A stretch of DNA of 63,676 bases from assembly GCF_001194135.2 (NCBI RefSeq), contig NC_068992.1:53915723-53979398 (forward strand), written 5' to 3'. A program made the position numbers and the translations under genes. The stretch comes from Octopus bimaculoides. Taxonomy: Eukaryota. Below the pieces are notes generated by a model that saw only the letters and a list, made by a program, of their open reading frames with translations, made no database searches and was not told the DNA's origin. Position 1 is the stretch's first letter. Each line of letters begins with the position of its first letter. Shown here piece after piece: positions 75 through 63,676 of this stretch.

Positions 75-1600
75 TTTTCACAATAGCATTTTCCTTTGTA
101 TATGTATTAAGACACAAATTAAAATTTTAATGTCTCCAACAGGCCTATTACTAGAGATATTATTTCAGCTTTTAGATCCCCTCATTTTGGCTTCATCTAT
201 TTCTAGATATTCATAGTTTAAGAATGGTTTAAAATGTTGGTACAAGGCGAGCAATTTAGGTGAAGGGATAAGTCAGTTGCGTCGACCCAAGTACTCAAAT
301 GCTACTTTGTTTATCAACCTCGAAAGGATGAAAGGCAAAGTCGACCTCAGCAGAATTTGAACTCATAACTTAAAGACCGACAAAATGTTGAGCGGCATTT
401 CTTCCGTCTTTTTGTTAGCAATAGAGAATCCCCTTCAATCAGAAATTACTTTCTCTTCACGCGGACCTTGAGAGAAATATCCGGCAGTTAGCCTCCATAT
501 CACACTCTATGTAGATTGATATGACCCAGATTAAGTTCCTTGAATATATCTGTGGTGCCTTTCTCTTCTGTATTGGCATTTCGCAACGCCAATTCTGTCG
601 TTTCCGTAGATATTTACCTTGTTGGCGTAGTAGTCAAAGAAAATACTGTTAAGAGTTTCTCCTCTCTCTCGTCATATTCGTCACGTAATATAGTCTGCAT
701 CGTTATATACTTTTGGCGGTTTATGATAGACAGGCTTCGATAAATTGTTGCAATCAAAAACGCTCCTCGCACTTAACATTGTGGCCTGCAGTTTTACAGC
801 TTATACGGTGATTTTTTCGCCTACTTCTATAAATAATCTTTATCCTCAAGTATTTACCATATAAAGGCTTCCCTACTCATCGTTTCACAATAGCACTCTG
901 TAGCTCCATTTTAGCTTAGTCCTTAGATTTTTCCGGAATTTCTTCTGTTACTTCGCCTCTATTCTTGTTGTGACCTTTTGACATTTCATCCTCTCTTGTA
1001 TATATGTTGACTCCTATGGAGACAGAAGACAGGTTTTTTTTACTTGTTTTTGTCTGTACTGTATAATTATTTGTACAAGATTCTAGTTATTCTTTGTTAG
1101 ATATTTATGTAATTCTTTACAAAAAAACTCCGATGGTTTTTGAAAGCCATTTGTGATAAAAACAATTTTCCTCTTCCAATTTGAGTATATTGCATTCGAA
1201 ATACAGGTCATTGTGTTTCATTCTTTCTTGTATACTTTTCTTAATTAATTTAGCTTCTAGTTAGGAATATTATAACTATAACTAATTACTGGAATGGCCA
1301 TACTATTGATGTTTATCATCTGGGTTTACTCTGCAGTTAGTTCTGTTTAAGTATTAATCTGACGCGTCTGCATTACTCTCTAAACTTTTCTTTCGTTTGC
1401 AGCTCATTGATTCCTAATTACTCGTGAGTTTGTGTTTGTTATAATTTTTTTTTTATCTCGTTTCTTTATCTAGAACGATATTTTTCTTATTAATTACTTT
1501 TCTTCTCTTCAAGTATGCCTTGCAGCATATCTTTTTGTTTTGATTTTTTTTTTTTCTTTTCCAAATTCAAGTTTGATTACAAATCTAAAAATGAAGCCGT
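75..1600 (-). mobile_element. Decayed R4/Dong-clade non-LTR retrotransposon (RT C-terminus, thumb, CCHC region, restriction-like endonuclease), split by a SINE at 224-420
   Basis: Colinear minus-strand peptide remnants with frameshifts: LEFG (1560-1571), LGINE (1403-1417), RRVRLILK (1346-1370), INSMAIPVISYSYNI (1266-1313), KPLYGKY (850-872), RCRL (691-702), PDISLK..FLIE (434-484), LEI..KM..IISLVIG (140-210). Confidence 0.75.
224..420 (-). mobile_element. tRNA-derived SINE family A (tail type i) with fold-back 5' end
   Basis: Diagnostic core gaaaggatgaaaggcaaagtcgacctcagcagaatttgaactca; B-box-like GAGTTCAAATTC on the minus strand. Confidence 0.9.
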
Positions 1601-5108: not shown

Positions 5109-5225
5109 AAGGCTGTGTGCTTGCAGAATCGTTAGCACGCCGGGAGAAATGCTTAGCGGTGTTTCGTCTGCCGCTACGTTCTGAGTTCAAATTCCGTCGA
5201 GGTCGACTTTGTCTTTCATTCTTTT
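5109..5225 (+). mobile_element. SINE family A, 5' half
   Basis: gcagaatcgttagcacgccgggagaaatgcttagcgg...gagttcaaattccgtcgaggtcgactttg: A-box/B-box-like tRNA head. Confidence 0.9.
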
Positions 5226-9689: not shown

Positions 9690-9850
9690 ATGAGAAACGT
9701 TTGGATATTACGATCGTCTGTCTTTACGTTCTGAGTTCAAATTCTGCCGAGATCGACTTTGCCTTTCGTCCTTTCGGGGTCGAATTAAGTATCTGGGGTC
9801 GATCTAATCAACTGGAAACCTCCCCACAAAAATTCAGGCCTAGAAAAGTA
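9690..9850 (+). mobile_element. SINE family A (tail type ii)
   Basis: tctttacgttctgagttcaaattctgccgagatcgactttgcctttcgtcctttcggggtcga core. Confidence 0.9.
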
Positions 9851-10690: not shown

Positions 10691-12419
10691 ATAAGGATGC
10701 CTCTGTGTGTGTGCCTGTGAGTGTGGGTGTAAGTAATTGAAATGTATCGAACCGCCTACATACAAATCTATCGATTGCTATAGTAACTACGTATTGTATT
10801 ATAAGGTAGATGTATGTGTCTTCTTATTTGGCACTTCTATGTGTGGTCTGAGAAACGATTGCGATAAATAGAAAATGTGTTCCGTGAAGCCGGAGCATTG
10901 AAGTGTGTGTAATGTAGCTGGTTGTTTCACTTCAATAAGTATGCCAGTCGTTCACGATAACCCGCTGAATATCATTAAATTGATATACTTGCTAACATTT
11001 CTCTGATAATGCATTTCTGCTCCACCACCATTTAATTTTCCAATAAGCCCAAGATGTCTCCTACGCAAACACTTGCAAATGCCTAATTTATGTATTTTTG
11101 CTCCCTCTTTCTCCACCCTTATCTCATCACACATTAATCAATAGCGTTGTTCCTTTAATTTGCTTACATTCGCAATTGATTTTGAATTCATCGATACGTC
11201 TTCAGCAAAAGGAATTGTTCTTAGAAGGATGTTAGAATGAGGAAGAATCGGTAATATTTTCAATACAGTTGTAATCTCTACTCAACGAGGAAGGACGCTG
11301 TTTATTGCTATTCGTTAATGCATTTATATACGTATATATAATATGATATGCATATCGCATCTTTCTGAAGCTACTGTAACGAAAGAACATTTGAGATTTA
11401 ATACCAATATGTGGACCGTTATTGATTAAATCGTGAAAGGTGCATTGTTGCATCTTTATAGAATAACGCAAGGTATTGATAGGATATACTTTTCTCTATT
11501 CATGTTCCTTTTCATTTAAATTGCTCATATTATTAAACACGGGCGTCATTGACGTACGATTAGACAACGAATCTTCATGTATAATATCTGTGCTCTTTGT
11601 TTTCTTTTATATATCTAAATATTACACAAAAAGCGTTTGTCATAAAAGAAGACATTATATCATAGGGTATGTATTTTAAATATCCGACTGTTGTAGTAGT
11701 AGTTGTTTTTGTTGCATTAGCTATCCAAATACATAATCTCACATTTCGTGAAAGCCGTCAAAGAATGTGAATATATAATTAGCTTAGAAATATAAGTTTC
11801 GAAAGTTAGATGTGTCAGCTAAGAAATAATTGACACACATTATCGCTAGAAACTAGTCTGAACTACATCCGATCCAATCCAAACACAAGTCTTTCTGTCA
11901 CATTACAATGCTTATATTTTGCGGGGAAAGGGAAAGAGAACGATTTATCAGCATTTTGAACCCATTGAGTTTTGTTACTGGCGAAATAAGTATTTCTACA
12001 AAGATTGGCAATATTTATTTCAGCATCATGAATAAACTTATATCAATATTTGAATGAAATACAATACATCAGAGCAGTGAACAAGATAATAATAAAAAAA
12101 TCCTTTTTAATACTCTATCAACAATATGTATGTAAACTATTAACAGTTCTATAAAAACATCATGTATGTACAATAAAAGGGACAACATTAAAAGGGAGAT
12201 TCGAAGGCCTATTAACTGATGATTGCAATCTATAATCCTACTAAGGTCACCGACAAATTCTATATAATCTAAATATGCTTCTTCACATTTGCAAAAATAG
12301 GTATAGATTTTATTTATAAAAGTAAATATGTAATTCTACCGCCAATATTCATTTATTTATGACATCGCATGTGTGAAAAAGGTTGGACTGTCCCGTCGAA
12401 GAGGATGTGCCAGAGTTCA

Positions 12420-12657
12420 GATTTTTCTGAACGACCAATACAAATGATTTTTATAGTGATCAACTACATGTGCTGTACGATAACTCATTCCCTCCATCAA
12501 ATCGACTTGCCTGAACAGGTGCACGGTGTGCCACGTGTCAAGTGTCGCAGGACAACGTGAGATTAAATGTGTTGCTCAAGAACACACTGCACCAACCCTT
12601 CTTGGAATTAAAACTACGATCACACAATCGTGAGTGCAACACCCTAATCACCCACCA
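12420..12657 (-). mobile_element. tRNA-derived SINE family C (CORE-SINE-like)
   Basis: Minus strand reads a tRNA-like head then gtgttcttgagcaacaca, resembling the CORE domain; alignable to 19785-20102. Confidence 0.75.
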
Positions 12658-12660
12658 ATT

Positions 12661-13285
12661 AATGTCTGAATAGACGATTGAAGATTGAACGAAGATTTCT
12701 TGCCTTTTGCATATACGACGGCGTAAGTAGTTTGAGAGAAAACCTGGATATACGTGACAACAGACATACCATGGTCTGGTATGGCCATGTAATGCATATG
12801 GACGAAGATGTTTGCATCAAGAAGTGTCTATCTCTAATTGTAGATGGAAACGTGTGGTAGGGGTAAACCCAGGAAGACGTGGGACGAATTGGTGAGAAAG
12901 GATCTACAGACATTAGGACTCGTAGAGGTGATGGCAAGGGAGTGAGACTCCTGCCAGTTTGCTGTACTTGAAAAGATACGTCAAGCTAAGTACAAGCACG
13001 GTTACCCTTACATACAACCCCCTCTAGCTGAGCATCCCTAACCTTGCGGGCTTGTAGGTGTTGGTTCTACGTAAAAATTCCCCGGCCCCGTGCTGTTGCG
13101 TAAAAGCACCCAGTACACTCTGTAAAGTGATCGGCATTAGGAAGGGCATCCAACCGCAGAAAGCATGCCAAAAAAGACATGATGTCTCAACGACCCTTCA
13201 GCTGTTCAATTCCTGTCAGATCGGTTAATCCTTACCAGCATGGAAAACGGATGTTAAACGATGATGAGGAGGAGGATGGGGAGGA
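12661..13285 (+). mobile_element. 5'-truncated RTE-clade LINE: end of ORF plus 3' UTR and tail
   Basis: WYGHVMHMDEDVCIKKC then (frameshift) CGRGKPRKTWDELVRKDLQTLGL, a typical RTE C-terminus; UTR with ggcattaggaagggcatcca and the tail ccagcatggaaaacggatgttaaacgatgatga. Confidence 0.85.
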
Positions 13286-14327
13286 ATATATTCAGTATCG
13301 TTGTATTCATTACAGATTAAACAGCAGCGTTTGTTCTTTAAAAAATAATTCAAAACAATATATATATATATATATTTAAATTAAATAATTTATTACCCAT
13401 AATTATAATATTATATTGGTAAGAGGATTACGAAATCATGACTCATGGTGATTTTGAAATCCGTTGCTGTGGACGGTATCTTTAAACAAATCAGTAAAAG
13501 AAAATAAAGCGCCTTAGAAACAATTTTAACGTTGAATAATTACGCAACCAATTTGTATGAACAATTAAAACCTCAGATAACCATCGTGAAAACGTATTGA
13601 AAAATGTTATTTTTGAGTCATAAATATTTTAAGTGGTATAATCATTGGTTGAAAATCCAGGATCAAAATATTCGTAGTTATTTAGAATATTAAGCCTCGT
13701 GTTAGTGCATGTTTTAAAATAAAACGGCATTAATAATTAAACAGCATCAGTAAAATTCCTGTAATCCTTCTTGGCAAGAAAACGAGGGATACTAAAATGA
13801 GATATTTTGCTGTTTTATTGTTCAGTGACAATTTTTTTCAATAGCAAAATCCATGTTTACAATATTGAAAAATTTTGGTTTTTATTTTGATCGTTTTGGA
13901 CATCGCTTGTTAATAATAAGCGTTAATATACAAATTAATGCTAATATTATTAATAGCCGTTAAAATATTAATGCGTTTTAGAATAAAATTTTTGTAACAA
14001 CTACTTTTATTAGAAATGAATTTCAATTTTGTAAAATTTCTTGTTTCCTGACATGTAAAATATTTAGCACGTGGTATCGATTTGAGCGGCCACAAAGGCA
14101 GTTAGGTTATTGTAACAAATATCAGTAAAGAACTTTCTATGAACTCGGTCAATGAGCTAAATAGAGTAGCCAAATCATGTTTTATCATGCTAAAAACATT
14201 GAATGTCTGTATGTAAAGAATATTGCATCTGAAAATCCTGAGAATAGGTTATATTTGATCACGATCAAGGCTAATATTTTGAGGATAAACCAGAAAAGGA
14301 ACTACGAGTAAACTTCCTGTCAGTACT

Positions 14328-14685: not shown

Positions 14686-15859
14686 GGATGTGCTCCACCG
14701 GGCTCTCCATTCAAAAACAGATCTAATCTAATAATATCGGTGGAATAGGATAAAATAACATGTGGAAGACTTGAAGGAAGCAGCTTTTTAATGAAAATAA
14801 TCGCAAAAACGAAATTTCAATGCCATACAAAGCACAGTTTCTGCCGTGCACCACATCTCAATGAAACATATGCGAAACGCCAAATCAATATCGGAAATCT
14901 TAGAAATTATAAAATATAAATTGAACAAAAGATTAAGTACGCAAAATGATTAATTAAGCATACTCACGAATGTCTACATTATCATATATACATTATAGTA
15001 CCCATAGGACTACACATACATCTCAATGTTTACACAACTACGTGAAATTTACACAGCTATGTGAGTTTAGAGAGTGAACAGTTCATAAGTTTAAAAACAC
15101 CACAAAAAACTATGCCCGGAGATAGATCTATCAACAAATAAAAATGCAGACGAATACAGATCTGTTAGCCTTAAGAAGTTATGTTACGAGCAATGCTTTC
15201 ATTCAGAGAACTTGAAGGCGTGTTGTCTCAAAAATTTAACCCTAAATAGACAGATCCGTCCCCTAATGTCGACGTCCAAGCTCATCATGCCTCAATGATA
15301 AAAATGCAAAATACAAACCGCATCGCCGTCACCAGTATCACGAAGGGCCGGGTACTGGTTCAAATCTTCCCGACACAAAGGAGCTTGTTATATGGCACCT
15401 TAGTCATATCACCAACTTGAATTTCTAAATTGTTGTCTGCTGAGGTCTCTGGGTGAGAGTTGAAGTCGACTTGTACAAATACAAAGCAAACGTCCAACAT
15501 ATAGTAATAATGAAATTAATGTTGTATTTGTGAATTTTTCGAATACGAAATCAAGTATAGACACCACTCGAGTTCAAGATGGAGATTCCTTTCATTCACT
15601 AGCAAAGTTTCAGAAATATTCATGGATATTTAAGCAACTTGATTTTCTCAGATTGAGTTGACAGATTTATTTTTTCACTCACAATCAAACAGCCCCCAAA
15701 AATCGCATATATACACGCATGCACTCGTGTAAAAATATGCTAAATGTATAACGTGTATTACCTGCCATTCGTACAAAATTGCATACATGTGTGAGTGTGT
15801 ATGCGTAGCGAAAAACTGGACAAAATGGTCAGTTGAAGACATTAATATATCTGAGTGCG

Positions 15860-16562
15860 TGTGCGTGTGTGTGTGTGTGTGTGCGTGCGTGTATAAGTGC
15901 GCAAATATGCGTGTATATGAATACATACATACGTTTATATATANNNNNNNNNNNNNNNNNNNNNNNNNNNNNNNNNNNNNNNNNNNNNNNNNNNNNNNNN
16001 NNNNNNNNNNNNNNNNNNNNNNNNNNNNNNNNNNNNNNNNNNNNNNNNNNNNNNNNNNNNNNNNNNNNNNNNNNNNNNNNNNNNNNNNNNNNNNNNNNNN
16101 NNNNNNNNNNNNNNNNNNNNNNNNNNNNNNNNNNNNNNNNNNNNNNNNNNNNNNNNNNNNNNNNNNNNNNNNNNNNNNNNNNNNNNNNNNNNNNNNNNNN
16201 NNNNNNNNNNNNNNNNNNNNNNNNNNNNNNNNNNNNNNNNNNNNNNNNNNNNNNNNNNNNNNNNNNNNNNNNNNNNNNNNNNNNNNNNNNNNNNNNNNNN
16301 NNNNNNNNNNNNNNNNNNNNNNNNNNNNNNNNNNNNNNNNNNNNNNNNNNNNNNNNNNNNNNNNNNNNNNNNNNNNNNNNNNNNNNNNNNNNNNNNNNNN
16401 NNNNNNNNNNNNNNNNNNNNNNNNNNNNNNNNNNNNNNNNNNNNNNNNNNNNNNNNNNNNNNNNNNNNNNNNNNNNNNNNNNNNNNNNNNNNNNNNNNNN
16501 NNNNNNNNNNNNNNNNNNNNNNNNNNNNNNNNNNNNNNNNNNNNNNNNNNNNNNNNNNNNNN

Positions 16563-18170: not shown

Positions 18171-19784
18171 ATATCCTATTAAATCCTCCTGTGCAATCAC
18201 AAACGCATAAAATACCACAACTACCTCCAAGCATATTCTATAGAATTACCACCAAGTAACATAAGACAACACGTGATTTCCACACTATTTGAAAAATAAA
18301 TATTCTTTTCTGGCACATCAAAGCAAACTTCATGCTGCATAATAACATAATTCTGTATCCCTAAATGAAATATTGCACATACACCGCAGGAACAGAGAAT
18401 TGTACTACTGTCATAGAAGACGCTCTCACAAAATTGATGAAAACGTTATGATAACATTTATATCAATAATAAGAAATATCTAACCTGAAAACAGGACTGC
18501 AAATGTCATGCTAAGGCGATACCACAAAATACCTTTGTAGATAATATGTGGTAAAATTAATCAATGCTAAAATACATAACGAAAACTGAAATCATGGCTA
18601 TAAAGCGAATGTTTTGAAAGCTGCACCGAAGTATTTTTATTTGTAGCAAAAAATCCATCCCAATGGAAACTACTAAACATATATGAAGCAGCATACAAAT
18701 ATTACTGAAGATTATGGAAACAGTAAATTGTATTGTCTTTGACAGATAACAAGCAAAAGCACGCTTAAAGATAGCATATGCATGAAACTCGAGACGCCTA
18801 CGGGAGAAGTACATTAAAAATAATACGCTATAGTTTTATTAAATAATCTCTTTTGATAACAAAGTAGTATGTTTGAACATACGTAAGTACGCATGTACAT
18901 CCTTTAATTCCTTTCAAACGATGATCAAATTGACAATTAATGACGTCATGAAGAAATACTTACTGCAAATACATTATATTAACTTAAGCTTCACACAATC
19001 GTAGAGAATGAGAAAGTAAGTAAGCTCTAGGATATGCGAATTTATTGAGGCATTGAAGCTAAAGAAAATCTACTGGATGCTTTTGCCAATTAACCACAGG
19101 ACAGAATATGTCTCCCAACTTTTGTATGAGTTTCGTTGAAATATAGTGTATCTCTAAAACAAATTGATAATTTAATTCAAAATTGAACAAATAAAAACTG
19201 AGATACCAAATTATGAAATACTTGAAATATTGTAAGCATAATCAATACGTGTAATAACAGATATTTTGAAATGATTAACACCAATGTTACAGACACAGAC
19301 ATAGCCTAAATTCTAGATGTTGCACTTATACGTAACATGCAGATTCTAGAACTGCTAGACATTATATACAGCTTAACTAGTGTATTTTTAATATATGATA
19401 ATTAAACACAACGAAACACGAAACAAGGCAAAACACCCCACCTATCCAAACATAAAATGCAGCTTTGAGTTATGCAGTAAAATCATATGTAAACGCAATA
19501 TGATGGTTTTCCTGTTAAATGTGTGCAATCGATTATATCGGCCCAGTACTTGCGCTTGTTTTCGACCCAGTAGGTATGAAAATCAAAGCTGACACTGACG
19601 AGGTTTGACCCAACAAATTAATGTCACTTATAGAATAAAACTTTATTTCTGTCGTACTGATTCCTCATATTCACTGTCTGAGGGGAGGAATAAGAGAGGT
19701 GTCGGTCTATGTGACTGGATTTGAAATCAGAATGTAAATACATTTGCTTATATATATATGGTAGTATCTTGTAGTCCGAGAAAG

Positions 19785-21860: not shown

Positions 21861-22055
21861 AATAATCCTTCTATATAGGCACAAGGCCTGACGTTTATGG
21901 GAAGGGGCTATAGAATGAGACTTATTTTATTGAACCTGAAAGGATGAAAGGCAAAAACAAATTCGGCGGAATTTGAACTCATAAACATATGACGGACAAA
22001 AAACAAAGCCTTAAAGCTTTTGCCCGGCGTGCTAACGATTCTGCCAGTTCGCCGC
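21861..22055 (-). mobile_element. SINE family A (tail type ii), near full length
   Basis: Ends in ttgcccggcgtgctaacgattctgccagttcgccgc (reverse complement of the head). Confidence 0.92.
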
Positions 22056-23164
22056 TATATTTCTAATATAAATGATGCCACTTATTCTCGAAGAAGGTAC
22101 AATCGTATATTATCGACCTCGCTACATGACATTCATATTAGCGACCTTGCAAACATAAAAGGCAATGTTATTCTCGTTAGGATTCGAAGTCAAAGTGAAA
22201 AGTGACAAAGCACCACAATTCGTCCGTTAATCTATCGAATTTGTCAGCCACCCAATAGCAACAGAAAGAAAAGCTGGTAACAGTCGAATTAGCTAAATTA
22301 GAAATCAATAAATTTTCCGATATTTTATTAAACATAAATCAATTTTATGTATTTTATGAAACATGAATTTAATGACATAAATGTGGTGTTTTCCATAGAA
22401 GGACACAGAAATCCTATCTATAATAATTTTCTATAAATTTGGCACAGAAATCAACAATGTTTATATAGGTGGTGCAAGTCTTACATATATATATATATAT
22501 ACTATTAGATGTACGGAAATTATTTAAACAGCTTACTTTTAAAAAAATTAAAGACCCGGCTATGAGTATAATCATTTTGATTCAATATTTATTCTTCCTT
22601 AATAGTCGTCATGGATTATAAAGACCAAAAACATTACTATGTATTTTAGCAATGCAAAGCCTTCTTCGTCAACTTTTTAATGAATTTAGAACAATAGAAC
22701 AATCTTTTCAGTTTTACAGTCGGCATTAAAGGACGAAGGGAATAATGCTGGAACTGCTAAAATCGTCATCGCCGGATACTAAATTCTTTAATATTTAACT
22801 AACATTCATTCAATAGTTTATTGCGCCTGCGCTAAATATGTGCGAACTTGTCTGTGCTAGGATATGCGTACATCTATACACACATACATACATATATATA
22901 TATGTAGGACATTTATAAGTAATCACTACAACTGTTTTCACGCTACATAGCTCTCCAGGCTTGCACGAATTTGGTTTTGTAACCGTTTTACAAATAAATG
23001 TCGAGCTGTACTATTTGTTGACACCAACATATTCAATTATCCATTCGCACACTACAGAAGCCCCAACGCAAACCTGGCCATGTGTATGATACTGCTACTT
23101 CACAACACCTGTGAAATCTGAAGGTGGATGTGCTTCATACAGGACTTTATTACGCTCTTAACAG

Positions 23165-24253: not shown

Positions 24254-24930
24254 NNNNNNNNNNNNNNNNNNNNNNNNNNNNNNNNNNNNNNNNNNNNNNN
24301 NNNNNNNNNNNNNNNNNNNNNNNNNNNNNNNNNNNNNNNNNNNNNNNNNNNNNNNNNNNNNNNNNNNNNNNNNNNNNNNNNNNNNNNNNNNNNNNNNNNN
24401 NNNNNNNNNNNNNNNNNNNNNNNNNNNNNNNNNNNNNNNNNNNNNNNNNNNNNNNNNNNNNNNNNNNNNNNNNNNNNNNNNNNNNNNNNNNNNNNNNNNN
24501 NNNNNNNNNNNNNNNNNNNNNNNNNNNNNNNNNNNNNNNNNNNNNNNNNNNNNNNNNNNNNNNNNNNNNNNNNNNNNNNNNNNNNNNNNNNNNNNNNNNN
24601 NNNNNNNNNNNNNNNNNNNNNNNNNNNNNNNNNNNNNNNNNNNNNNNNNNNNNNNNNNNNNNNNNNNNNNNNNNNNNNNNNNNNNNNNNNNNNNNNNNNN
24701 NNNNNNNNNNNNNNNNNNNNNNNNNNNNNNNNNNNNNNNNNNNNNNNNNNNNNNNNNNNNNNNNNNNNNNNNNNNNNNNNNNNNNNNNNNNNNNNNNNNN
24801 NNNNNNNNNNNNNNNNNNNNNNNNNNNNNNNNNNNNNNNNNNNNNNNNNNNNNNNNNNNNNNNNNNNNNNNNNNNNNNNNNNNNNNNNNNNNNNNNNNNN
24901 NNNNNNNNNNNNNNNNNNNNNNNNNNNNNN

Positions 24931-25019: not shown

Positions 25020-25124
25020 AATCCATCCATCTTCGTCACCCACTATCCCTGGAAGTCTCGCGGTAGTAGAGCCCAGAAGGAGCTCCTCCGTATGGTCCTA
25101 CCAGAAACGTAAAGATCGAATCCT

Positions 25125-25335
25125 GGAACTGGCATATTACTGTGCCAGCAATTACAATTCTAGCCTTTAATGTAGTATCCTGCCTTCCATTACTCATGAA
25201 TACGACTCCGAGATACTTAAAATTCTCCACCCCATTCAGTGATGTTGCACTAACATGCAGTGTGTAGTAGGACGTATTTGTTGAGAGCACGAATGTGTCA
25301 GTCATCGTAACACTAATTCTCATCCTTGATTTACA
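25125..25335 (-). mobile_element. RTE-clade LINE reverse-transcriptase fragment
   Basis: MRISVTMTDTFVLS..VENFKYLGVVFMSNGRQD..ARI: the distal RT FKYLG motif and following helix. Confidence 0.8.
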
Positions 25336-25560
25336 GCACTGCACACTGAGCCCACTCAGTGCATGCTGGAGTCACTTTCAGATGGATCAAATAACACCTT
25401 GACGTCTGCAAATATCAGCCGACCGCTTGTGGAAGCTCTTTTACACTGGCAGAGCATGTCAATCCAGTTCATAAAAAAATTATGAAAAAGAACTGTTTCG
25501 ACATAGCACCATCTATCCTAAAACAGACATCTGGGCATTCATAAAAGGATTTCACCCCGC

Positions 25561-28398: not shown

Positions 28399-28411
28399 TT
28401 TTAAGGCTAAT

Positions 28412-28610
28412 TATTGGTTTCAAATTTTGGCACAAGGCCAGTAATTTCTGGGACTGAGTAACTTGGTTATATCGACCGCGGTGCTCAACTGGTACTTATT
28501 TTATCGGTTCCGAAAGAACAAAAGGTAAAGCCGGTCACAGTGACGTTTAAACTCAGAAGTTAAAGACCGATGAGATTCCGCAAAGCATTTTTCCCGGAGT
28601 GCAAACGATT
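28412..28610 (-). mobile_element. SINE family A (tail type i), copy 2 of triple array
   Basis: attggtttcaaattttggcacaaggcc...cccggagtgcaaacgatt. Confidence 0.88.
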
Positions 28611-28612
28611 GT

Positions 28613-28817
28613 TTTTCTCTATCTAGGCACAAGGGCCAAAATTTAGCGGGCAGGGGTCAGTCGATTAGATAGCCTCCAGTACGACACTGGTATATAATTT
28701 ATCGACCTCGAAAAGTAAAGTCAACCTCGGTTGAATTTGAACTCAGAACATAAAGACAGACAAAATACTGCAAAGCATTTCGCCCGGCGTGCTAACGTTT
28801 CTGCCAGCTCGTCGCCC
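28613..28817 (-). mobile_element. SINE family A (tail type ii), copy 3 of triple array
   Basis: ttctctatctaggcacaagg...gcccggcgtgctaacgtttctgccagctcgtcgcc. Confidence 0.9.
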
Positions 28818-29352: not shown

Positions 29353-30342
29353 CTAAAACAGTGAAAAGAAAAGGAAAACGTAAGTCGACTGAAGTGCAGA
29401 ATATTTTACATCATTTATCTAACATCCATTCCTTTTCTAGACTAACAACTTTATAGTATCCAATCAATTTTCTTAGCAAGAACATTAATCTTCAATTTTT
29501 ACTCCTATTTCTGCATTCTTTTCTGCACGCTGTAACGAACAACCATGTTATTTCTGTGACTAATGCCTACAGACATTTTACATCAATCTTCTCAGTGTTT
29601 ACACCTAATGTTTCACGGAGAAATTTTAAGCATTTTGGTTATAAGTGTAAAAAGAGGTTGTTATGGAAAAGATATCCAAGGACAAAATAATAGATTTACT
29701 AACCGGAAAGACATGCTAGTTGTAGGGCATTGCAGTATTTTGTTTTATGAAATTATTCCTTGGGTAAAATTGTTTTGAAGAGATATTCAAAACTAATGCC
29801 AAAATAGTGACAGTAACAATATTAGTAATGAAGATGACGAATAAGAGAAGAAGAATGAGACACAGACGAAATAAAAGTAGAACAGAAGTATAATGATAAA
29901 AGAATAATTATAGTAATTCAGAAGCAGAGATTTTAAGAATTAGAAAACACTGAATATGATGTTACAGTATTAATAATTTATCAAATAGCATTATCGCAAA
30001 CATTCTAACAAACTGAGGATGACCGTTAAAGAAAATAATTTGCCAAGAAATTCGTAAGATGGCTTAAATGTCTTAACCGCAAATAAACAAATTCGACCAC
30101 AGCTTAGTGTCCAAGTGTCGTTTTAATTCTTGATAGTAAGATTCTTAACATGTCCATAAAGCATTAATTAGTGATTTATTAATTATCTTCATACAAACAA
30201 GCTTTAGATCACGTCTAATGTTATGATACAAAACTTCGCCGTATAAAGTGTTTCTATACAGAGTTAGACCATTAGTTCGATATCTATGTAGAAAATTTTG
30301 TTATTACCAAATTCTTGTTTGATAATTGGTAATGTTTCTAAT

Positions 30343-30551
30343 GCGGTGAGCTGGCAGATGTCTTAGCACATTAGGCGAAATGCTTAGCGATATTTCGTAT
30401 TTCTATACGTTCTGAGTTCAAATTCCGCCGAGGTCGACTTCCGGCCTTTCGGGGTCGATAAATTAAGTACCAATTGCATACTCGGGTCGATCTAAGCAAT
30501 TATCCTTCCCCACAAAAATTTCTGGTCTTGTACCCAGAGTACAAAAGAATA
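30343..30551 (+). mobile_element. SINE family A (tail type ii), full length
   Basis: gcggtgagctggcag head, gagttcaaattccgccgaggtcgac, cctttcggggtcgataaattaagtacc. Confidence 0.92.
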
Positions 30552-30612: not shown

Positions 30613-31533
30613 ATACACACACATACATACCTACCTACATATATATATACATATACATATATATATATATATATANNNNNNNNNNNNNNNNNNNNNNNNN
30701 NNNNNNNNNNNNNNNNNNNNNNNNNNNNNNNNNNNNNNNNNNNNNNNNNNNNNNNNNNNNNNNNNNNNNNNNNNNNNNNNNNNNNNNNNNNNNNNNNNNN
30801 NNNNNNNNNNNNNNNNNNNNNNNNNNNNNNNNNNNNNNNNNNNNNNNNNNNNNNNNNNNNNNNNNNNNNNNNNNNNNNNNNNNNNNNNNNNNNNNNNNNN
30901 NNNNNNNNNNNNNNNNNNNNNNNNNNNNNNNNNNNNNNNNNNNNNNNNNNNNNNNNNNNNNNNNNNNNNNNNNNNNNNNNNNNNNNNNNNNNNNNNNNNN
31001 NNNNNNNNNNNNNNNNNNNNNNNNNNNNNNNNNNNNNNNNNNNNNNNNNNNNNNNNNNNNNNNNNNNNNNNNNNNNNNNNNNNNNNNNNNNNNNNNNNNN
31101 NNNNNNNNNNNNNNNNNNNNNNNNNNNNNNNNNNNNNNNNNNNNNNNNNNNNNNNNNNNNNNNNNNNNNNNNNNNNNNNNNNNNNNNNNNNNNNNNNNNN
31201 NNNNNNNNNNNNNNNNNNNNNNNNNNNNNNNNNNNNNNNNNNNNNNNNNNNNNNNNNNNNNNNNNNNNNNNNNNNNNNNNNNNNNNNNNNNNNNNNNNNN
31301 NNNNNNNNNNNNNNNNNNNNNNNNNNNNNNNNNNNNNNNNNNNNNNNNNNNNNNNNNNNNNNNNNNNNNNNNNNNNNNNNNNNNNNNNNNNNNNNNNNNN
31401 NNNNNNNNNNNNNNNNNNNNNNNNNNNNNNNNNNNNNNNNNNNNNNNNNNNNNNNNNNNNNNNNNNNNNNNNNNNNNNNNNNNNNNNNNNNNNNNNNNNN
31501 NNNNNNNNNNNNNNNNNNNNNNNNNNNNNNNNN

Positions 31534-34979: not shown

Positions 34980-35260
34980 ACAGAATGATTTCTCTAACAC
35001 AGTTAAAGCATATAGGCCAACATTACACTCGGGAGGAGATCGATAAGTTATCTAAATATAAAAGAACTCGAAGTGGGAATAGGCGAGATATTGAGTGTGA
35101 CAGTAAAATGGTAATAAAATAACTACAGCCAAGGTACGATAGAAAAGGAAAGAACGCGATAACAAATCCTCCATATTTAGACGTAAAAATCTTCTGACAA
35201 CTTCAAAAATATCTTATCATGCACAGAACGCACTCTACAAAAAAACGTACTTAATTCAAT
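34980..35260 (+). mobile_element. R4/Dong-type LINE 3' (RLE C-terminal) relic
   Basis: EIDKLSKYK(x)ELEV and later LQKI..LSCTERTLQK, matching the KEIEKLSKYKDLEIE..LQKI.L.GTAHIL pattern. Confidence 0.55.
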
Positions 35261-38521: not shown

Positions 38522-38707
38522 GTTAGTTTCAAATTTTGGCACAAGGTCACTAATTTCGAGAGTAGGAGGTTAGTCGATTATATTGACCCTGTGACTCAAC
38601 TGATGCTTATTTTATAAACCGTGAAAGGAAAAAAGACAAAGTCGACCTCCGTTCATGTTAAACTAAGAAGGTAAAGACGGACAAACTAGCGTTAAGAACT
38701 TTGCCGT
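38522..38707 (-). mobile_element. SINE family A (tail type i)
   Basis: gtttcaaattttggcacaagg...acaaagtcgacctc...gtaaagacggac. Confidence 0.85.
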
Positions 38708-52281: not shown

Positions 52282-53050
52282 NNNNNNNNNNNNNNNNNNN
52301 NNNNNNNNNNNNNNNNNNNNNNNNNNNNNNNNNNNNNNNNNNNNNNNNNNNNNNNNNNNNNNNNNNNNNNNNNNNNNNNNNNNNNNNNNNNNNNNNNNNN
52401 NNNNNNNNNNNNNNNNNNNNNNNNNNNNNNNNNNNNNNNNNNNNNNNNNNNNNNNNNNNNNNNNNNNNNNNNNNNNNNNNNNNNNNNNNNNNNNNNNNNN
52501 NNNNNNNNNNNNNNNNNNNNNNNNNNNNNNNNNNNNNNNNNNNNNNNNNNNNNNNNNNNNNNNNNNNNNNNNNNNNNNNNNNNNNNNNNNNNNNNNNNNN
52601 NNNNNNNNNNNNNNNNNNNNNNNNNNNNNNNNNNNNNNNNNNNNNNNNNNNNNNNNNNNNNNNNNNNNNNNNNNNNNNNNNNNNNNNNNNNNNNNNNNNN
52701 NNNNNNNNNNNNNNNNNNNNNNNNNNNNNNNNNNNNNNNNNNNNNNNNNNNNNNNNNNNNNNNNNNNNNNNNNNNNNNNNNNNNNNNNNNNNNNNNNNNN
52801 NNNNNNNNNNNNNNNNNNNNNNNNNNNNNNNNNNNNNNNNNNNNNNNNNNNNNNNNNNNNNNNNNNNNNNNNNNNNNNNNNNNNNNNNNNNNNNNNNNNN
52901 NNNNNNNNNNNNNNNNNNNNNNNNNNNNNNNNNNNNNNNNNNNNNNNNNNNNNNNNNNNNNNNNNNNNNNNNNNNNNNNNNNNNNNNNNNNNNNNNNNNN
53001 NNNNNNNNNNNNNNNNNNNNNNNNATATATATATATATATATATACATAC
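52135..53050. other. Assembly gap (N 52282-53024) with TA/TG flanks
   Basis: N run. Confidence 0.99.
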
Positions 53051-57453: not shown

Positions 57454-57681
57454 ACATTTCTCGGTATAACCACCAGTATCTGTTGTTTGACTCTCGTACA
57501 ACCTTAAACCACATGTATCACAAATACGTGTTTTCTTTCTTTCTATGTACCGGAGTATAATTGAAATAAAAGCTTTTTATCTATTCCTTGACCCTCATTC
57601 TTCAATATAATAGAGCTTTTATTGCTGCGAGTGAATTTTTCAGTTCAAGGGAAGTAGATGTGTAGTGTTTCTTCTATTTAT

Positions 57682-57876
57682 TATTGGTTTCAAATGTTGG
57701 TACAAGGACACTAATTTCGGGACAGTGGGGAAGTCAATTAAATCGAACACAGAACCCAACTGGAACTTGTTTTATCGACTCCGAAGAATGAAAGGCAAAT
57801 TCGACCTCGGCAGAATTTGAACTCACAACTGTTAAGCATTTTGCCCGGCGTGCTAACGATTCTGCCAGCTCACCGC
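57682..57876 (-). mobile_element. SINE family A (tail type i), first of tandem pair
   Basis: ttggtttcaaatgttggtacaagg...gcccggcgtgctaacgattctgccagctcaccgc. Confidence 0.92.
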
Positions 57877-57892
57877 ATTTTTTCCAGTAAAT

Positions 57893-58105
57893 TCTGGTCT
57901 CAAATTTTTGGTACAAGGCCAGCAATTTAAGACGGAGGTGTAAACCGATTTCATTGACCTCAGTAATTCAGCTGGTACTTATTTTATCGATCCCGATTTG
58001 ATGAAAGGCAAGGTTGATCGTGGCGGAATTTGATCTCAGAACGTAAAGACGGACGGGGTACTGCTAAAGATTTTGCCCAGTGTGCAAATGATTCTGCCAG
58101 TTTAT
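57893..58105 (-). mobile_element. SINE family A (tail type i), second of tandem pair
   Basis: tggtctcaaatttttggtacaaggccagc...cagaacgtaaagacggacg...gattctgccag. Confidence 0.9.
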
Positions 58106-59134: not shown

Positions 59135-60410
59135 ATATATAAGTGTGTGTGTGTGTGTTTGTACGGGATAGAGTGTATGTGTGTGTGTGTAAGCGTATGC
59201 ATGCATGTATGCATCTATGTATGTTTAGTTCTTTGTGCATGTGTCTTTCTCAGTGCATATGTGTGTGTGTATACATAAATGTGATGGTGGAGGTGATTTC
59301 CATTTATGTCGATAACGTTTATTCTAGCATACAAATATAAATCTACTCGAACGCATACACCCACCCACACACAGACACGAAGGAACACATACAGACACAC
59401 AGCGACAAATACATACACTTACATATATATTAGCATCTACACAAATATACAGATTTATATATTCCTTAAATGTATGAATATATACATATATATNNNNNNN
59501 NNNNNNNNNNNNNNNNNNNNNNNNNNNNNNNNNNNNNNNNNNNNNNNNNNNNNNNNNNNNNNNNNNNNNNNNNNNNNNNNNNNNNNNNNNNNNNNNNNNN
59601 NNNNNNNNNNNNNNNNNNNNNNNNNNNNNNNNNNNNNNNNNNNNNNNNNNNNNNNNNNNNNNNNNNNNNNNNNNNNNNNNNNNNNNNNNNNNNNNNNNNN
59701 NNNNNNNNNNNNNNNNNNNNNNNNNNNNNNNNNNNNNNNNNNNNNNNNNNNNNNNNNNNNNNNNNNNNNNNNNNNNNNNNNNNNNNNNNNNNNNNNNNNN
59801 NNNNNNNNNNNNNNNNNNNNNNNNNNNNNNNNNNNNNNNNNNNNNNNNNNNNNNNNNNNNNNNNNNNNNNNNNNNNNNNNNNNNNNNNNNNNNNNNNNNN
59901 NNNNNNNNNNNNNNNNNNNNNNNNNNNNNNNNNNNNNNNNNNNNNNNNNNNNNNNNNNNNNNNNNNNNNNNNNNNNNNNNNNNNNNNNNNNNNNNNNNNN
60001 NNNNNNNNNNNNNNNNNNNNNNNNNNNNNNNNNNNNNNNNNNNNNNNNNNNNNNNNNNNNNNNNNNNNNNNNNNNNNNNNNNNNNNNNNNNNNNNNNNNN
60101 NNNNNNNNNNNNNNNNNNNNNNNNNNNNNNNNNNNNNNNNNNNNNNNNNNNNNNNNNNNNNNNNNNNNNNNNNNNNNNNNNNNNNNNNNNNNNNNNNNNN
60201 NNNNNNNNNNNNNNNNNNNNNNNNNNNNNNNNNNNNNNNNNNNNNNNNNNNNNNNNNNNNNNNNNNNNNNNNNNNNNNNNNNNNNNNNNNNNNNNNNNNN
60301 NNNNNNNNNNNNNNNNNNNNNNNNNNNNNNNNNNNNNNNNNNNNNNNNNNNNNNNNNNNNNNNNNNNNNNNNNNNNNNNNNTATATATATATATATATAT
60401 ATATATATTA
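59135..60410. other. Degenerate TG/CA repeats and assembly gap (N 59494-60381)
   Basis: N run. Confidence 0.98.
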
Positions 60411-62104
60411 ACAGAATGAGATGAAAATCCAAGGCTGTGAAAGATTTCAGAACATTTATAAAGAGAAGGTCTTACAGCTGTTTCCGGGATATTTTATATA
60501 TCCCTTCATCGGAGACGGTGTGAGAAAATGGTTACGCATTCTGATATATGACCTACGTTGGAATCCCCATTCGCATAATCACCGAACCTGGAGCTTAACT
60601 ATAGTCTGTCCATAGCACTTACTCAGCATTACCTGACATCTTCGGGTATTCTTGACACCATTATCTCTCATAACCCCCCCTCTCTCTCTTTCTCTCTCTT
60701 CATTATCTCCTGCTTCATTATTGTTGACTCGAGATTAAACAATAACAATAAACGAAAATTGCTACTAACCCACCTTTTTGTCAGGACACACGAAATTATC
60801 GTATTTTATGAATGATATAGAAATGGTCTCGTTAAATTGTAAGATTGTTATAAAATATAGCGGAAGAAACTTGAAATTTTGTATATCTAAATATGAAAGA
60901 TATAAAATTCAATCTTAAATCTTTCTCATTTCCAAATTTCTCATGAAATGGAGTGTCTTTGGTCTGAAAAGAATTTATTAAAATAATCTTCTCATAATTA
61001 AACTGTGATTTTGTATATAATTTAAAATGAGATTGCGATGAAAGGTTTTAATTTAAATTACTTTACCTAAGAAGTACGTATCTTAGAAACAGGTGCGGTC
61101 TTAGAAGGATTAGTATTATAAGGAGAAGAAAATCCTTAAAAATATAAATTTTCTGCATAATAATAGATTTATAGTGGACTTTAATACATATTTATAGATA
61201 CACAACTTGCCTACCTGATATTGTAACTAATAACAATGTGATGTATGGTTGGTCTGAACGGTTACTTTTCACCTGCTCAGTTCACCGTAATATGCATTGC
61301 TAGTAGTACCTGTAGCCTGCTCAGACACCGGCATAATGACGCTAGGTCTATAAATTTCTGTTGACTTCTGTAAAGTTAGAAGCAACAGTAATACTATAAA
61401 CAAAGATACAGTTCTGTCTTTCCTGCAATAAACATGATACGAGACGGGAGTTTTAAAATCATTGACTTACATTCACAAAATGAAAATTGAATTTAGTTGA
61501 TACTGATTAAATAAACATGCGAAATATAGTGAGGTATTTGGTTTCGTTTTGAGTATTTATAAATTGAGAATGCAGATCAAAATGACAGCGTATAGAATCT
61601 GTAAAATTATCAGGTTCCAAGGAAGTAAGTCTGGGACAAAGTTTTTATTCTTAACTGGAGTTAAACGTTATCACCTTTCTCTGGCGCCAGTAATATCAGG
61701 CGTGTGCGCACGATTTGTTTGTGTGAATTAACGGGATCTAGGAAATTTATTTGTCCTTGACACCTTGGATTGATTCCAAAATTTCAGTAATTCCATATAC
61801 CTGATGTTTAAAAACAAGAGTTAAAACTTGCAGGTATAAAGTGATAGGTTTTGTTGTTGCTTTTTGTTCGCTTGTTTTGTTTTTTGTTGTCTTTTGTTGT
61901 TGCTGTTTTTAAATTTAAGTTAATACGTTCTCTGAAAAGTATCACTATCATGATGTAAATAATAGCTTTTATTAAATAGACTGAAATAACGTTTTTTTTT
62001 TAATGAAATCCTATACATCGCTAAATCCAACAGAAGACAACGGATATTTGAAATAATCCCGACGCATGCTTCTGGAATATCAATAGATTATACGAACCCA
62101 GATA

Positions 62105-62127
62105 CACACATATAAGAATATACATAC

Positions 62128-62167
<40 letters not shown>

Positions 62168-62230
62168 GCATTGTTATATACACACACACATACACATATA
62201 TATATATAAATGTATAACAATGTATACATT
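62105..62230. repeat. (TA)n/(CA)n microsatellite
   Basis: Direct inspection. Confidence 0.95.
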
Positions 62231-62753
62231 GAAACACAAACATTCTCTCTATATATGTTTGAGAGATACTGTACGTGTGCGTCTGTACGTATTTACGTAA
62301 GGACGTGTGTATTAATGTGTGAACGTTTATGTAACAGGCTAAATTCTGTATGAACCTACCCACGTGTTTTTTATAGCGACACTTCTGATCTATATGAATA
62401 TGTGTTTGTGTAGTATATGTGTGTGTGCGTATGTTCATATTTATATATATATATGTGTGTGTAAGTAAGTGTGTATGTATGTGAGTTATGTAGTGGTGAA
62501 TGCATGTATATGTGTATAGTTGTTATGCGCGTAGAATAATAAAATCTTGTCAGAGTAAACAAGTGGGAATAAACAAGGAGCAAAGCATTACTTTTCATTT
62601 TATATCTTATCGTTCTCGTATATGTAATTATACTCGGTATGGTGTGTTATAATAATGTTACTGTCAGTGCTGACATTGCAAGTGATTCTGTGTTGTTTTT
62701 ATTTGTATCTCTTACATATATATTGCTGTGCTTTCAACTACTCCACTATTTTT

Positions 62754-62761
62754 TGACGTCA
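62754..62761. promoter_or_regulatory. Full palindromic CRE (TGACGTCA), putatively in intron 1
   Basis: Exact motif about 620 bp downstream of the proposed TSS. Confidence 0.35.
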
Positions 62762-63278
62762 TTTTTTATTCATCATGCATTAGATTGTGCTGTTTTGAAG
62801 TAGGTGTGAACGAATTTTATTATGTGACGGCAGTTTGAAATAAGCTCTTTATTATTTTTTTTTTAACACTTGGTGTAGAGTAGTGAATAATGTGAAATGT
62901 TTTCGCAACACATGTCGGTTGGTAACTTATGTAGTACTGCCAATAAAAGGGTTGTAGTTTTTTCACTTATTTATCTACACACGGTGTGAACTCTTGTACT
63001 GCAGATAATTAAATGCCAGTTTCCATTCTTTATTTTACTACTTTGTGTCTGCTTCTATGGTTTTTGTTTTAGGGTAAAGAATTACCTACGAATACTTTAT
63101 TCTGATATTGAAGGAAACAAAAAGTGAATATATTCTTGTTACTGATTCTCTAAGATATCTAGAATACAGTTTTACAAATCCCGTTTAAGAACTTCATTGT
63201 TCTAATTGAACTCATGTTCCCTAATTTCAATGTTGAATATAATAATAACGAGGCCGAAATATACGTTGATAGACTTAC

Positions 63279-63376
63279 TAACTGTCCTATATTCGATGCA
63301 CCAAGAGATAGACTAAGAGAGAAAGTGCGAAAGAAACATATATAGAGGAAAAGACAAGCTAAGCTCATTCGTCAAT
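63279..63376 (-). other. Candidate first exon (98 nt) of a minus-strand gene
   Basis: Starts at the Inr A and ends at TTA then GTAAGT (63278-63273); contains an ATG at 63368 in frame to the donor (30 codons). Confidence 0.45.
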
Positions 63377-63431
63377 GAATATTCTTGAAGCTCCAACTAT
63401 TATATAAGAGCATGACGTCATGAGCAGATAA
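63373..63431 (-). promoter_or_regulatory. Candidate core promoter: GATA - CRE - TATA - Inr
   Basis: AGATAA at 63426-63431; 12-bp palindrome CATGACGTCATG at 63411-63422; TATATAA starting at 63406 (-30); TTCATT (BBCABW Inr) with A at 63376. Confidence 0.55.
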
Positions 63432-63676
63432 AGAGCGGACACATACTCCCTTCTGTAACTCTACTTTAGTTTTCATAGCTTACGTCTTCAACTGGTTTCA
63501 GTCATAGGCTTGGGGAATGTTGGGATGCCACGTTCAAAGGTTTTCTCCATTTACAATTACGTCTATAGGCATCTTCTTGAATTAAAGATCAAGACAGGAA
63601 ATCAAAAGATTCTCTAGAGATTTAGCGTCTTAGCACACAAACTCACGTTAACTCGGCTCAATAGCTGTTATATATA

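What the first reader, a model, noticed from the sequence alone, without database searches (positions are those of the whole stretch)
63279..63431. CRE-TATA-Inr promoter with exact spacing, followed by a spliced first exon (minus strand)
Seen in sequence, reading the minus strand: a GATA site, a perfect 12-bp CRE palindrome (CATGACGTCATG), TATATAA 6 bp later, an Inr TTCA(+1)TT with its A exactly 30 nt from the first T of the TATA, and a perfect GTAAGT donor 98 nt later. Established: a full CRE just upstream of a TATA box is the classic architecture of CREB/cAMP-inducible immediate-early and neuropeptide genes. Inference: this is the 5' end of an unannotated inducible gene whose introns make up the rest of the window. 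Caveat: TATATAAG is also a perfect TATA on the plus strand, but that orientation puts the CRE between TATA and start and has no Inr match.
Basis: partly seen in the sequence, partly recalled or inferred. Interest (0 to 1): 0.7.

Follow-up and report, generated by a model that had tools for sequence, protein, structure and literature searches.

The report
Promoter-like motif cluster, function unproven
A cAMP-response element, a TATA box and a splice-donor motif do sit together at the end of this window with textbook spacing, but nothing I could test shows that a gene starts there, so it is either a chance motif cluster or an ordinary inducible promoter.

Summary
All the motifs exist at the stated coordinates on the minus strand. 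They are a GATA site, the 12-bp palindrome CATGACGTCATG (63422-63411), TATATAA (63406-63400), an A at 63376 exactly 30 nt from the first T of the TATA, and TTA|GTAAGT with an exon end at 63279. There are corrections. The TATA starts 4 nt after the 12-mer. The "Inr" fits only the loose BBCABW consensus, not YYANWYY or TCAKTY. The exon side of the donor is non-consensus.

By this window's own background rates the whole composite is expected about 1-3 times per 1000 windows. That is rare locally, but it means tens of chance copies in a Gb-sized genome. Four other TATA-Inr-donor look-alikes lie in the same window; only the CRE sets this one apart.

New points in favour: a second full CRE lies 659 bp away (1 of 400 simulated windows have such a pair), a half CRE lies at +3, and the first ATG opens a hydrophobic 30-codon frame that runs to the donor.

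Points against: the leader is 8 nt with a poor start context, no homologue exists for the ORF, no coding exon was detected anywhere in the window, and there is no compositional promoter signature.

No transcript or cross-species data were reachable. My estimates are chance about 0.55, real CRE/TATA promoter about 0.27, other regulatory element about 0.13.

The parts
63426..63431 (-). GATA-type site (TTATCT on minus, AGATAA on plus)
   Evidence: Read directly. WGATAR occurs 289 times in the window, so it is uninformative.
63411..63422 (.). 12-bp palindrome CATGACGTCATG containing a full CRE (TGACGTCA, 63413-63420)
   Evidence: It is the only exact 12-mer in the window. The 8-mer occurs 3 times against 0.79 expected.
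63400..63406 (-). TATATAA (TATA-like; TTATATAA is a palindrome and reads TATATAAG on the plus strand)
   Evidence: It is not inside a (TA)n run. There are 356 TATAWAW sites outside (TA)5+ runs in the window.
63374..63379 (-). Inr-like TTCATT with the A at 63376, 30 nt from the first T of the TATA
   Evidence: matches BBCABW only, not YYANWYY or TCAKTY. A BBCABW falls in the +28 to +33 slot at 7% of random positions.
63370..63374 (-). Half CRE TGACG at +3 to +7 of the putative start
63279..63376 (-). Putative 98-nt first exon. ATG at 63368 (+9) opens 30 codons, MSLACLFLYICFFRTFSLSLSLGASNIGQL, in phase 0 at the donor.
   Evidence: The leader is 8 nt, with C at -3 and A at +4. The segment is CT-rich and contains an acceptor-like pyrimidine tract plus TTAG (63336-63313). 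The RNA is not structured.
63273..63278 (-). GTAAGT splice-donor motif, preceded by TTA
   Evidence: There are 18 GTAAGT per strand in the window.
63159..63368 (-). 69-codon read-through ORF that continues past the donor. AATAAA lies 58 nt after its stop (63101-63096).
   Evidence: No homologue and not on record.
62754..62761 (.). Second full CRE TGACGTCA, 659 bp from the first, inside the putative intron 1. A further half site CGTCA lies at 62825-62829.
   Evidence: Two full CREs within 700 bp occur in 1 of 400 simulated windows. The flanks are unrelated to those of the other CREs.

Best explanation
The most likely single reading is that no transcript starts here. A rare but chance CRE palindrome lies in unique, AT-rich, non-coding DNA. 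In such DNA, TATA-like heptamers, loose Inr matches, GTAAGT hexamers and open CT-rich reading frames are all common enough to be found next to it. On this reading the cluster does nothing that depends on the claimed spacing, and the "first exon" is ordinary intergenic or intronic sequence.

Shown: the motifs exist, and each core element has a high background frequency in this window. Inferred: absence of function. This is only slightly more likely than not.
For: - The window holds five TATA / Inr(28-33) / GTRAGT(30-300) composites outside (TA)n runs. Four have no CRE.
- Background rates are 0.12 for a TATA within 40 nt, 0.074 for the loose Inr, 0.07-0.125 for the donor and 0.15 for a first-ATG ORF of at least 30 codons.
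- These rates give a composite expectation of about 1-3 x 10^-3 per window, which is roughly 50-125 chance copies in a 2.7-Gb genome.
- The Inr fails both classical consensus definitions.
- The ATG sits 8 nt from the proposed cap site, with C at -3.
- The ORF has no relative and is not on record.
- None of 291 ORFs of at least 48 aa gives a significant Pfam hit.
- None of the 122 most protein-like ORFs matches anything in the protein database.
- No RNA family matches.
- GC and CpG o/e at the site equal the window average.
- The same CT-rich stretch reads equally well as a splice acceptor.
Against: - A second full CRE lies 659 bp away. Only 1 of 400 simulated windows has two within 700 bp.
- A half CRE lies at +3 to +7.
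- The TATA-to-A distance of exactly 30 nt is the functional optimum (PMC1779604).
- The CRE lies 6 nt upstream of the TATA, as in inducible CRE/TATA promoters (PMC5740062).
- The first ATG's frame is the only open one. It runs to the donor in phase 0 and begins with an uncharged hydrophobic stretch. That combination occurs at 0.18% of random positions.
- The region is single-copy and not part of a repeat.
- The database negatives are weak because the organism is barely represented.
Confidence: 0.55

Rival explanations
1. It is a genuine minus-strand CRE/TATA RNA polymerase II promoter. A CREB/ATF dimer on the palindrome at -44 to -37, helped by the +3 half site and the CRE 659 bp downstream, recruits CRTC/CBP and TFIID to the TATA at -30. 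Transcription starts near 63376. The 98-nt first exon is spliced at 63279, or the transcript runs on unspliced to the AATAAA at 63101. The product would be an unannotated inducible gene, either coding (a 30-codon signal-peptide-like start) or non-coding.
For: - The motif order and spacing are those of inducible CRE/TATA promoters (PMC5740062; PMC1779604).
- The CREs cluster.
- The composite expectation is only about 1-3 x 10^-3 per window.
- With the ORF and signal-peptide-like features the expectation falls to about 2-4 x 10^-5.
- The sequence is unique.
Against: - There is no transcript, homologue or downstream exon.
- The Inr matches only the loosest consensus.
- The leader is 8 nt and the start context is weak.
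- The ORF continues 39 codons past the donor, so the frame does not mark the exon end.
- A first intron longer than 63 kb, or an undetected exon, has to be assumed.
- The supporting features I added were found after the fact, among about eight that I looked at.
Confidence: 0.27
2. It is a CREB/ATF-bound regulatory module that is not this promoter. It would be an enhancer or intronic element made of the two full and two half CREs between 62.75 and 63.42 kb, or a promoter firing on the plus strand towards a gene beyond the window end. The TATA, Inr and donor would be incidental.
For: - Homotypic clustering of CREs.
- The TATA core is a palindrome and reads TATATAAG on the plus strand.
- Only 270 bp of plus-strand downstream sequence are visible, so a plus-strand gene cannot be excluded.
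Against: - On the plus strand the CRE would lie between the TATA and the start, and there is no Inr-like CA at +28 to +33.
- At least 6 half-site hits in 800 bp are reached in 3.5-10% of simulated windows.
- No occupancy or conservation data are available.
Confidence: 0.13
3. The promoter-like block comes from a mobile element or a small-RNA gene. It would be an LTR whose U3 carries the CRE and TATA, or a polymerase III type-3 (U6-like) promoter.
For: - LTR U3 regions and type-3 promoters both carry a TATA at about -30 with upstream activator sites.
- A purine-rich run (AGAAGGGAG) precedes a TG at about 63441-63450.
Against: - 62001-63676 has no second copy in the other 62 kb, and local terminal repeats are absent.
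- The window's interspersed repeats do not overlap the site.
- No coding sequence is visible in the 235 bp upstream.
- No Rfam family matches at E <= 1.
- A TTTT run at +24 to +27 would stop polymerase III after about 27 nt.
Confidence: 0.04

Closest known systems
Proximal CRE/TATA promoters of activity- and cAMP-inducible genes (c-fos, Nr4a1, Nr4a2, Dusp1, Ptgs2; somatostatin-type neuropeptide genes)
   Same: A full palindromic CRE lies a few nucleotides upstream of a TATA box, further CRE full and half sites lie nearby, and the TATA sits 30 nt from a CA start dinucleotide. PMC5740062 defines CRE/TATA as a TATA within 300 bp downstream of a CRE and shows that such promoters are the inducible ones. 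The somatostatin comparison rests on my own recall that its CRE lies at about -48 to -41.
   Different: Those promoters have mapped start sites, bound CREB/CRTC, conserved CREs and known transcripts. None of that is shown here. No gene product was detected.
Focused TATA-Inr core promoters
   Same: The TATA start is at -30, within the -31/-30 optimum reported for tissue-specific TATA promoters (PMC1779604). The start dinucleotide is a pyrimidine-purine CA.
   Different: The Inr matches only BBCABW. YYANWYY and the arthropod TCAKTY both fail at +4 and +5. The eighth base of TATAWAAR is T.
Chance promoter look-alikes in AT-rich non-coding DNA
   Same: Four other TATA / Inr / GTRAGT composites occur in this window (TATA starts at 61561, 56258, 55285 and 15941). 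The CRE at 18941 also has GTAAGT motifs within about 75 nt on either side.
   Different: Only the flagged site combines the core composite with a CRE, a second CRE nearby and an open first-ATG frame.

Membership tests
CRE/TATA inducible Pol II promoter | [quoted passage not shown] | tested here: met
   The CRE core is at 63420-63413 and TATATAA at 63406-63400, 6 nt apart on the minus strand.
CRE/TATA inducible Pol II promoter | An experimentally mapped transcription start 28-33 nt downstream of the TATA | not testable with these tools
   No CAGE, RACE or RNA-seq data for this organism are reachable. Only a loose Inr match lies at the right distance.
CRE/TATA inducible Pol II promoter | A transcription unit downstream (an exon with a product, or a known RNA) | tested here: inconclusive
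   The ORF from the first ATG has no homologue and is not on record. No Pfam or homology signal exists for any ORF in the window. There is no Rfam hit. The database barely covers this organism.
CRE/TATA inducible Pol II promoter | CREB/ATF occupancy and induction by cAMP or Ca2+ | not testable with these tools
   This needs ChIP and a reporter or endogenous induction assay.
CRE/TATA inducible Pol II promoter | Conservation of the CRE between species | not testable with these tools
   No related eukaryotic genomes are available. The exact 23-mer is absent from the metagenome and prokaryote genome collections, which says nothing either way.
Initiator element | Match to YYANWYY (mammalian) or TCAKTY (arthropod) with A at +1 | tested here: not met
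   The context is TTCATTGA. The G at +4 and A at +5 break both patterns, and only BBCABW is met.
U2-type 5' splice site | MAG|GTRAGT consensus and use in a transcript | tested here: inconclusive
   The intron side GTAAGT is perfect and the exon side TTA is non-consensus. Usage is untestable. GTAAGT occurs 36 times in the window.
Signal-peptide-bearing precursor, first coding exon | A start codon in usable context followed by an n/h/c signal peptide, with a recognisable precursor downstream | tested here: inconclusive
   The hydrophobic core LACLFLYICF scores a mean Kyte-Doolittle value of 2.7 and an SLG|A-type site is present. However the leader is 8 nt, -3 is C, 18% of open first-ATG ORFs in this window pass the same crude test, and no precursor-like ORF lies downstream.
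LTR of a retrotransposon | A second LTR copy or many genomic copies, with adjacent internal coding sequence | tested here: not met
   There is no second copy in the window, no terminal repeats and no coding sequence in the flanks.
Pol III type-3 (U6-like) gene | A TATA at -30 followed by a known small RNA that ends at a T run | tested here: not met
   There is no Rfam match at E <= 1. A TTTT at +24 to +27 would give an RNA of about 27 nt.

The most novel reading that the evidence does not exclude
The block is the working promoter of an unannotated, activity- or cAMP-inducible gene in a cephalopod-like invertebrate genome. Exon 1 would encode the signal peptide of a small, lineage-restricted secreted peptide with no detectable relatives. 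Alternatively the 69-codon ORF would be expressed unspliced and end at the AATAAA 58 nt after its stop.
Probability: 0.12. Interest if true: 0.4.

Novelty: not a real feature. Interest (0 to 1): 0.15.

Why it matters
If it were real, it would be one more CRE/TATA promoter, a well-known kind. Its modest value would be as a sequence-defined handle on activity-dependent transcription in an invertebrate with a complex nervous system, and as a pointer to an orphan secreted peptide or non-coding RNA.

If it is chance, which I think slightly more likely, it is a useful calibration point. In 33%-GC DNA, a textbook TATA-Inr-donor layout appears about five times per 60 kb. Only the upstream activator site carries real information.

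Tried and rejected
1. **Repeat or mobile-element origin.** Self-BLAST of 62001-63676 against the rest of the window found nothing beyond 13-25-nt chance matches. Local direct, inverted and tandem repeat searches were empty. The window's SINE-like repeat does not overlap the site. Rejected.

2. **Small-RNA gene.** Rfam at gathering threshold over the whole window found nothing, and so did the tRNA scan. Rfam at E <= 1 on the last 1.3 kb gave only microsatellite miRNA-like noise. The exon RNA folds worse than shuffled sequence. Rejected.

3. **Looking up window ORFs in public assemblies to obtain flanking DNA or transcripts.** Three ORFs were tried and none is on record.

4. **Exact and gapped DNA pattern scans.** The viral collection returned two unrelated viral contigs from the gapped pattern. 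The metagenome and prokaryote-genome collections returned nothing for the exact 23-mer. As expected, none of these collections yielded DNA from this locus.

5. **Identifying the organism through a LINE reverse-transcriptase fragment.** There was a single 49%-identical hit, on an unnamed 525-kb ENA contig. The organism remains unidentified.

6. **A weak Crust_neurohorm Pfam hit.** The ORF at 15095-15295 (+) scored 20.2 bits against a cutoff of 25. This raised the idea of a neuropeptide gene in the window. A full HMMER search of 1.84 billion representatives found nothing. Rejected as chance.

7. **CpG-island or GC shift at the site.** None was found.

8. **Shared origin of the three CREs.** Their flanks do not align.

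9. **Neuropeptide-precursor-like ORFs** with repeated G[KR][KR] or dibasic sites. None was convincing.

10. **Technical failures.** A first Monte Carlo run timed out and was replaced by empirical rates and faster simulations.

Full report
**1. What is in the sequence**

All positions below were read on the minus strand and checked by script.
- The GATA-type site is TTATCT at 63431-63426.
- The CRE palindrome is CATGACGTCATG at 63422-63411, with the core TGACGTCA at 63420-63413.
- The TATA is TATATAA at 63406-63400.
- The proposed start is the A at 63376, in the context TTCATTG, exactly 30 nt after the first T of the TATA.
- The donor is TTA|GTAAGT with its G at 63278, so the putative exon 63376-63279 is 98 nt.

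- The TATA begins 4 nt after the 12-mer, which is 6 nt after the 8-bp core.
- The "Inr" satisfies only the loose BBCABW pattern. It fails YYANWYY and TCAKTY because of G at +4 and A at +5.
- The exon side of the donor is TTA, which is non-consensus.

The TATA core TTATATAA is itself a palindrome, so its orientation is set only by the neighbouring motifs.

**2. Context**

- The window is a draft eukaryotic assembly. It has 14 runs of N (4,970 bases), 33% GC, and abundant TA, CA and TCTA-type microsatellites.
- It carries LINE fragments and about ten fragments of a SINE-like interspersed repeat.
- It has no tRNA gene and no Rfam family at gathering threshold.
- CpG o/e is about 0.9 throughout. 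Neither GC nor CpG changes at the window end.
- The last 1.7 kb is single-copy within the window and has no terminal or tandem repeats around the site.
- I could not identify the organism. A reverse-transcriptase fragment from the window found only one 49%-identical protein, on an unnamed ENA contig.

**3. Is it more than chance?**

I measured each motif's rate in this same window.
- TGACGTCA occurs 3 times against 0.79 expected. Three of 100 dinucleotide shuffles reach 3.
- The 12-mer with at most one mismatch occurs twice against 0.14 expected.
- A TATAWAW starts within 40 nt downstream of 12% of positions.
- A BBCABW falls in a 6-nt slot at 7.4% of positions.
- GTAAGT lies at +30 to +300 of 7% of positions, and GTRAGT at 12.5%.

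Multiplying these rates gives about 1-2 x 10^-3 expected composites per window.

A more direct count agrees. Five TATA / Inr(28-33) / GTRAGT(30-300) composites exist in the window outside (TA)n runs, with TATA starts at 63406, 61561, 56258, 55285 and 15941. The chance that one of five has a CRE within 40 nt is about 3 x 10^-3.

So the core-promoter-plus-donor layout is commonplace here, and only the CRE is informative. The full composite is rare for one window, but it is expected some 50-125 times in a 2.7-Gb genome by chance alone.

**4. Additional features I looked for**

Features in favour of a real element:
- A second full CRE lies at 62754-62761, 659 bp away. In 400 simulated windows under each of an order-1 and an order-3 Markov model, only one had two full CREs within 700 bp.
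- A half CRE (TGACG) lies at +3 to +7, and another at 62825. The 800-bp total of six half-site hits is reached in 3.5-10% of simulations.
- The three full CREs share no flanking sequence, so they are not copies of a repeat.
- The first ATG (63368, +9) opens the only open frame. That frame runs 30 codons to the donor in phase 0 and begins MSLACLFLYICFFRTFSLSLSLG|A, which looks like a signal peptide.
- Treating every position of the window as a start, the first ATG's frame stays open for at least 30 codons at 15% of positions. It stays open up to a GTRAGT donor at 1.2%, and is also hydrophobic at 0.18%.

Features against:
- The leader would be only 8 nt, and the ATG has C at -3 and A at +4.
- The ORF continues 39 codons beyond the donor, so it does not mark an exon boundary.
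- The stretch is CT-rich low-complexity sequence of the kind that produces "SLSLSL" ORFs all over the window.
- The same stretch contains an excellent acceptor-like pyrimidine tract plus TTAG (63336-63313). This shows how easily splice-like signals arise here.
- An AATAAA at 63101-63096 allows yet another reading, a 300-nt unspliced mRNA. It also shows how many alternative readings are available.

**5. Tests for a gene**

- The 69-aa ORF is not on record in public assemblies and has no relative among 5.8 billion proteins, even at E <= 10.
- Of 291 stop-to-stop ORFs of at least 48 aa on both strands, none gave a Pfam hit above noise. The two sub-threshold hits were traced to their ORFs.
- The Crust_neurohorm-like ORF at 15095-15295 has no homologue in 1.84 billion representatives.
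- A concatenate of the 122 most protein-like ORFs (4,759 aa, ranked by amino-acid composition) produced 2,926 word-sharing candidates and no hit at E <= 10^-3.
- No neuropeptide-precursor-like ORF was seen.
- No RNA family matches the last 1.3 kb at E <= 1, apart from microsatellite noise.
- The putative exon has no RNA structure, with a z-score of +1.3.

These negatives fit "nothing is transcribed into a known product". They are weak because the protein collection evidently holds almost nothing from this organism. A non-coding or orphan gene would also escape all of these tests.

**6. Weighing**

The layout is that of cAMP- and activity-inducible promoters. PMC5740062 defines CRE/TATA promoters by a TATA within 300 bp downstream of a CRE, and shows that these, not CRE/TATA-less promoters, recruit CRTC1 and are induced. 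PMC1779604 shows that TATA starts at -31 and -30 are the positions most tightly linked to context-specific transcription. So if the site is used, the mechanism is clear and conventional.

The open question is only whether it is used.
This assumes tens of real CRE-adjacent TATA promoters per genome with matching Inr and donor features, against 50-125 chance composites.
- The second CRE raises the odds several-fold.
- The ORF features and the implausible 8-nt leader roughly cancel each other.
- The failed gene tests lower the odds slightly.

My final estimates are:
- about 0.27 for a real minus-strand promoter;
- about 0.13 for another CREB/ATF-type regulatory role or a plus-strand start;
- about 0.04 for a mobile-element or small-RNA origin, which is largely refuted;
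- about 0.55 for chance.

These numbers are soft. Plausible inputs move the promoter probability anywhere between 0.1 and 0.6.

**7. Verdict**

The motifs and distances are right. The Inr and the donor exon side are weaker than stated. The statistical excess is real but modest.

For the interpretation, I cannot tell. Even if it is true, this is a new member of a thoroughly known kind of promoter, and no reading that the evidence leaves open is very surprising.

They are capped 5' ends and junction reads at 63376 and 63279, the scaffold annotation beyond 63676, and alignment to related genomes.

Noticed in passing
window 62754-62761 and 18939-18950: There are two more full CREs. One is 659 bp from the flagged one (AATGACGTCAAA). 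The other is at 18.9 kb (AATGACGTCATG, one mismatch from the 12-mer), with GTAAGT motifs about 60 nt upstream and about 70 nt downstream on the plus strand. The total of three full CREs compares with 0.79 expected.
   Followed up: partly
window 15095-15295 (+): This ORF has a C-x3-C-x8-C pattern and a sub-threshold Pfam match to the crustacean CHH/MIH/GIH neurohormone family (20.2 bits, cutoff 25, E 5.6e-4 among 291 ORFs scanned). A full HMMER search of 1.84 billion representatives found no relative, so it is most likely chance.
   Followed up: yes
window, TATA starts at 61561, 56258, 55285 and 15941 (all minus strand): Four other TATAWAW / BBCABW(28-33) / GTRAGT(30-300) composites lie outside (TA)n runs. 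All five composites in the window, including the flagged one, are on the minus strand. I did not explain that bias.
   Followed up: no
window 25039-25371 (-) and about 12300-13450 (+): These are LINE-type reverse-transcriptase remnants in the two most GC-rich patches (0.45-0.47). One carries an FKYLGV motif and the other a WYGHVMHMDED-type tail. The first has a single 49%-identical relative, on a 525-kb ENA contig (ERZ25067576).
   Followed up: partly
window 225-370, 5109-5223, 9715-9783, 22012-22062, 28410-28529, 28767-28810, 30340-30437, 38523-38558, 57680-57880, 57987-58100: About ten fragments of one SINE-like interspersed repeat, 77-91% identical to each other, lie on both strands. Their translations share SSNSAEVDFAFH-like peptides. 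The family was not identified.
   Followed up: partly
window: 14 N runs, e.g. 15944-16562, 24254-24930, 30676-31533, 52282-53024, 59494-60381: The assembly gaps total 4,970 N, and nearly all are flanked by TA, CA or TCTA microsatellites. The assembler evidently broke at simple repeats. Long "ORFs" and giant "repeats" reported across them are artefacts of the Ns.
   Followed up: no
window 63478-63485 and 63557-63565 (minus strand): Two copies of AGACGTAA, a CRE-like variant, lie at about -110 and -187 of the putative start. AACGTGG lies at about -157. AGACGTAA occurs only five times in the window, and another pair lies at 35179 and 35545.
   Followed up: partly
window 63336-63313 and 63101-63096 (minus strand): Inside the putative first exon there is a 20-nt pyrimidine tract ending in TTAG, which looks like a strong splice acceptor. 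An AATAAA lies 58 nt after the stop of the 69-codon read-through ORF. Both allow alternative transcript models.
   Followed up: no
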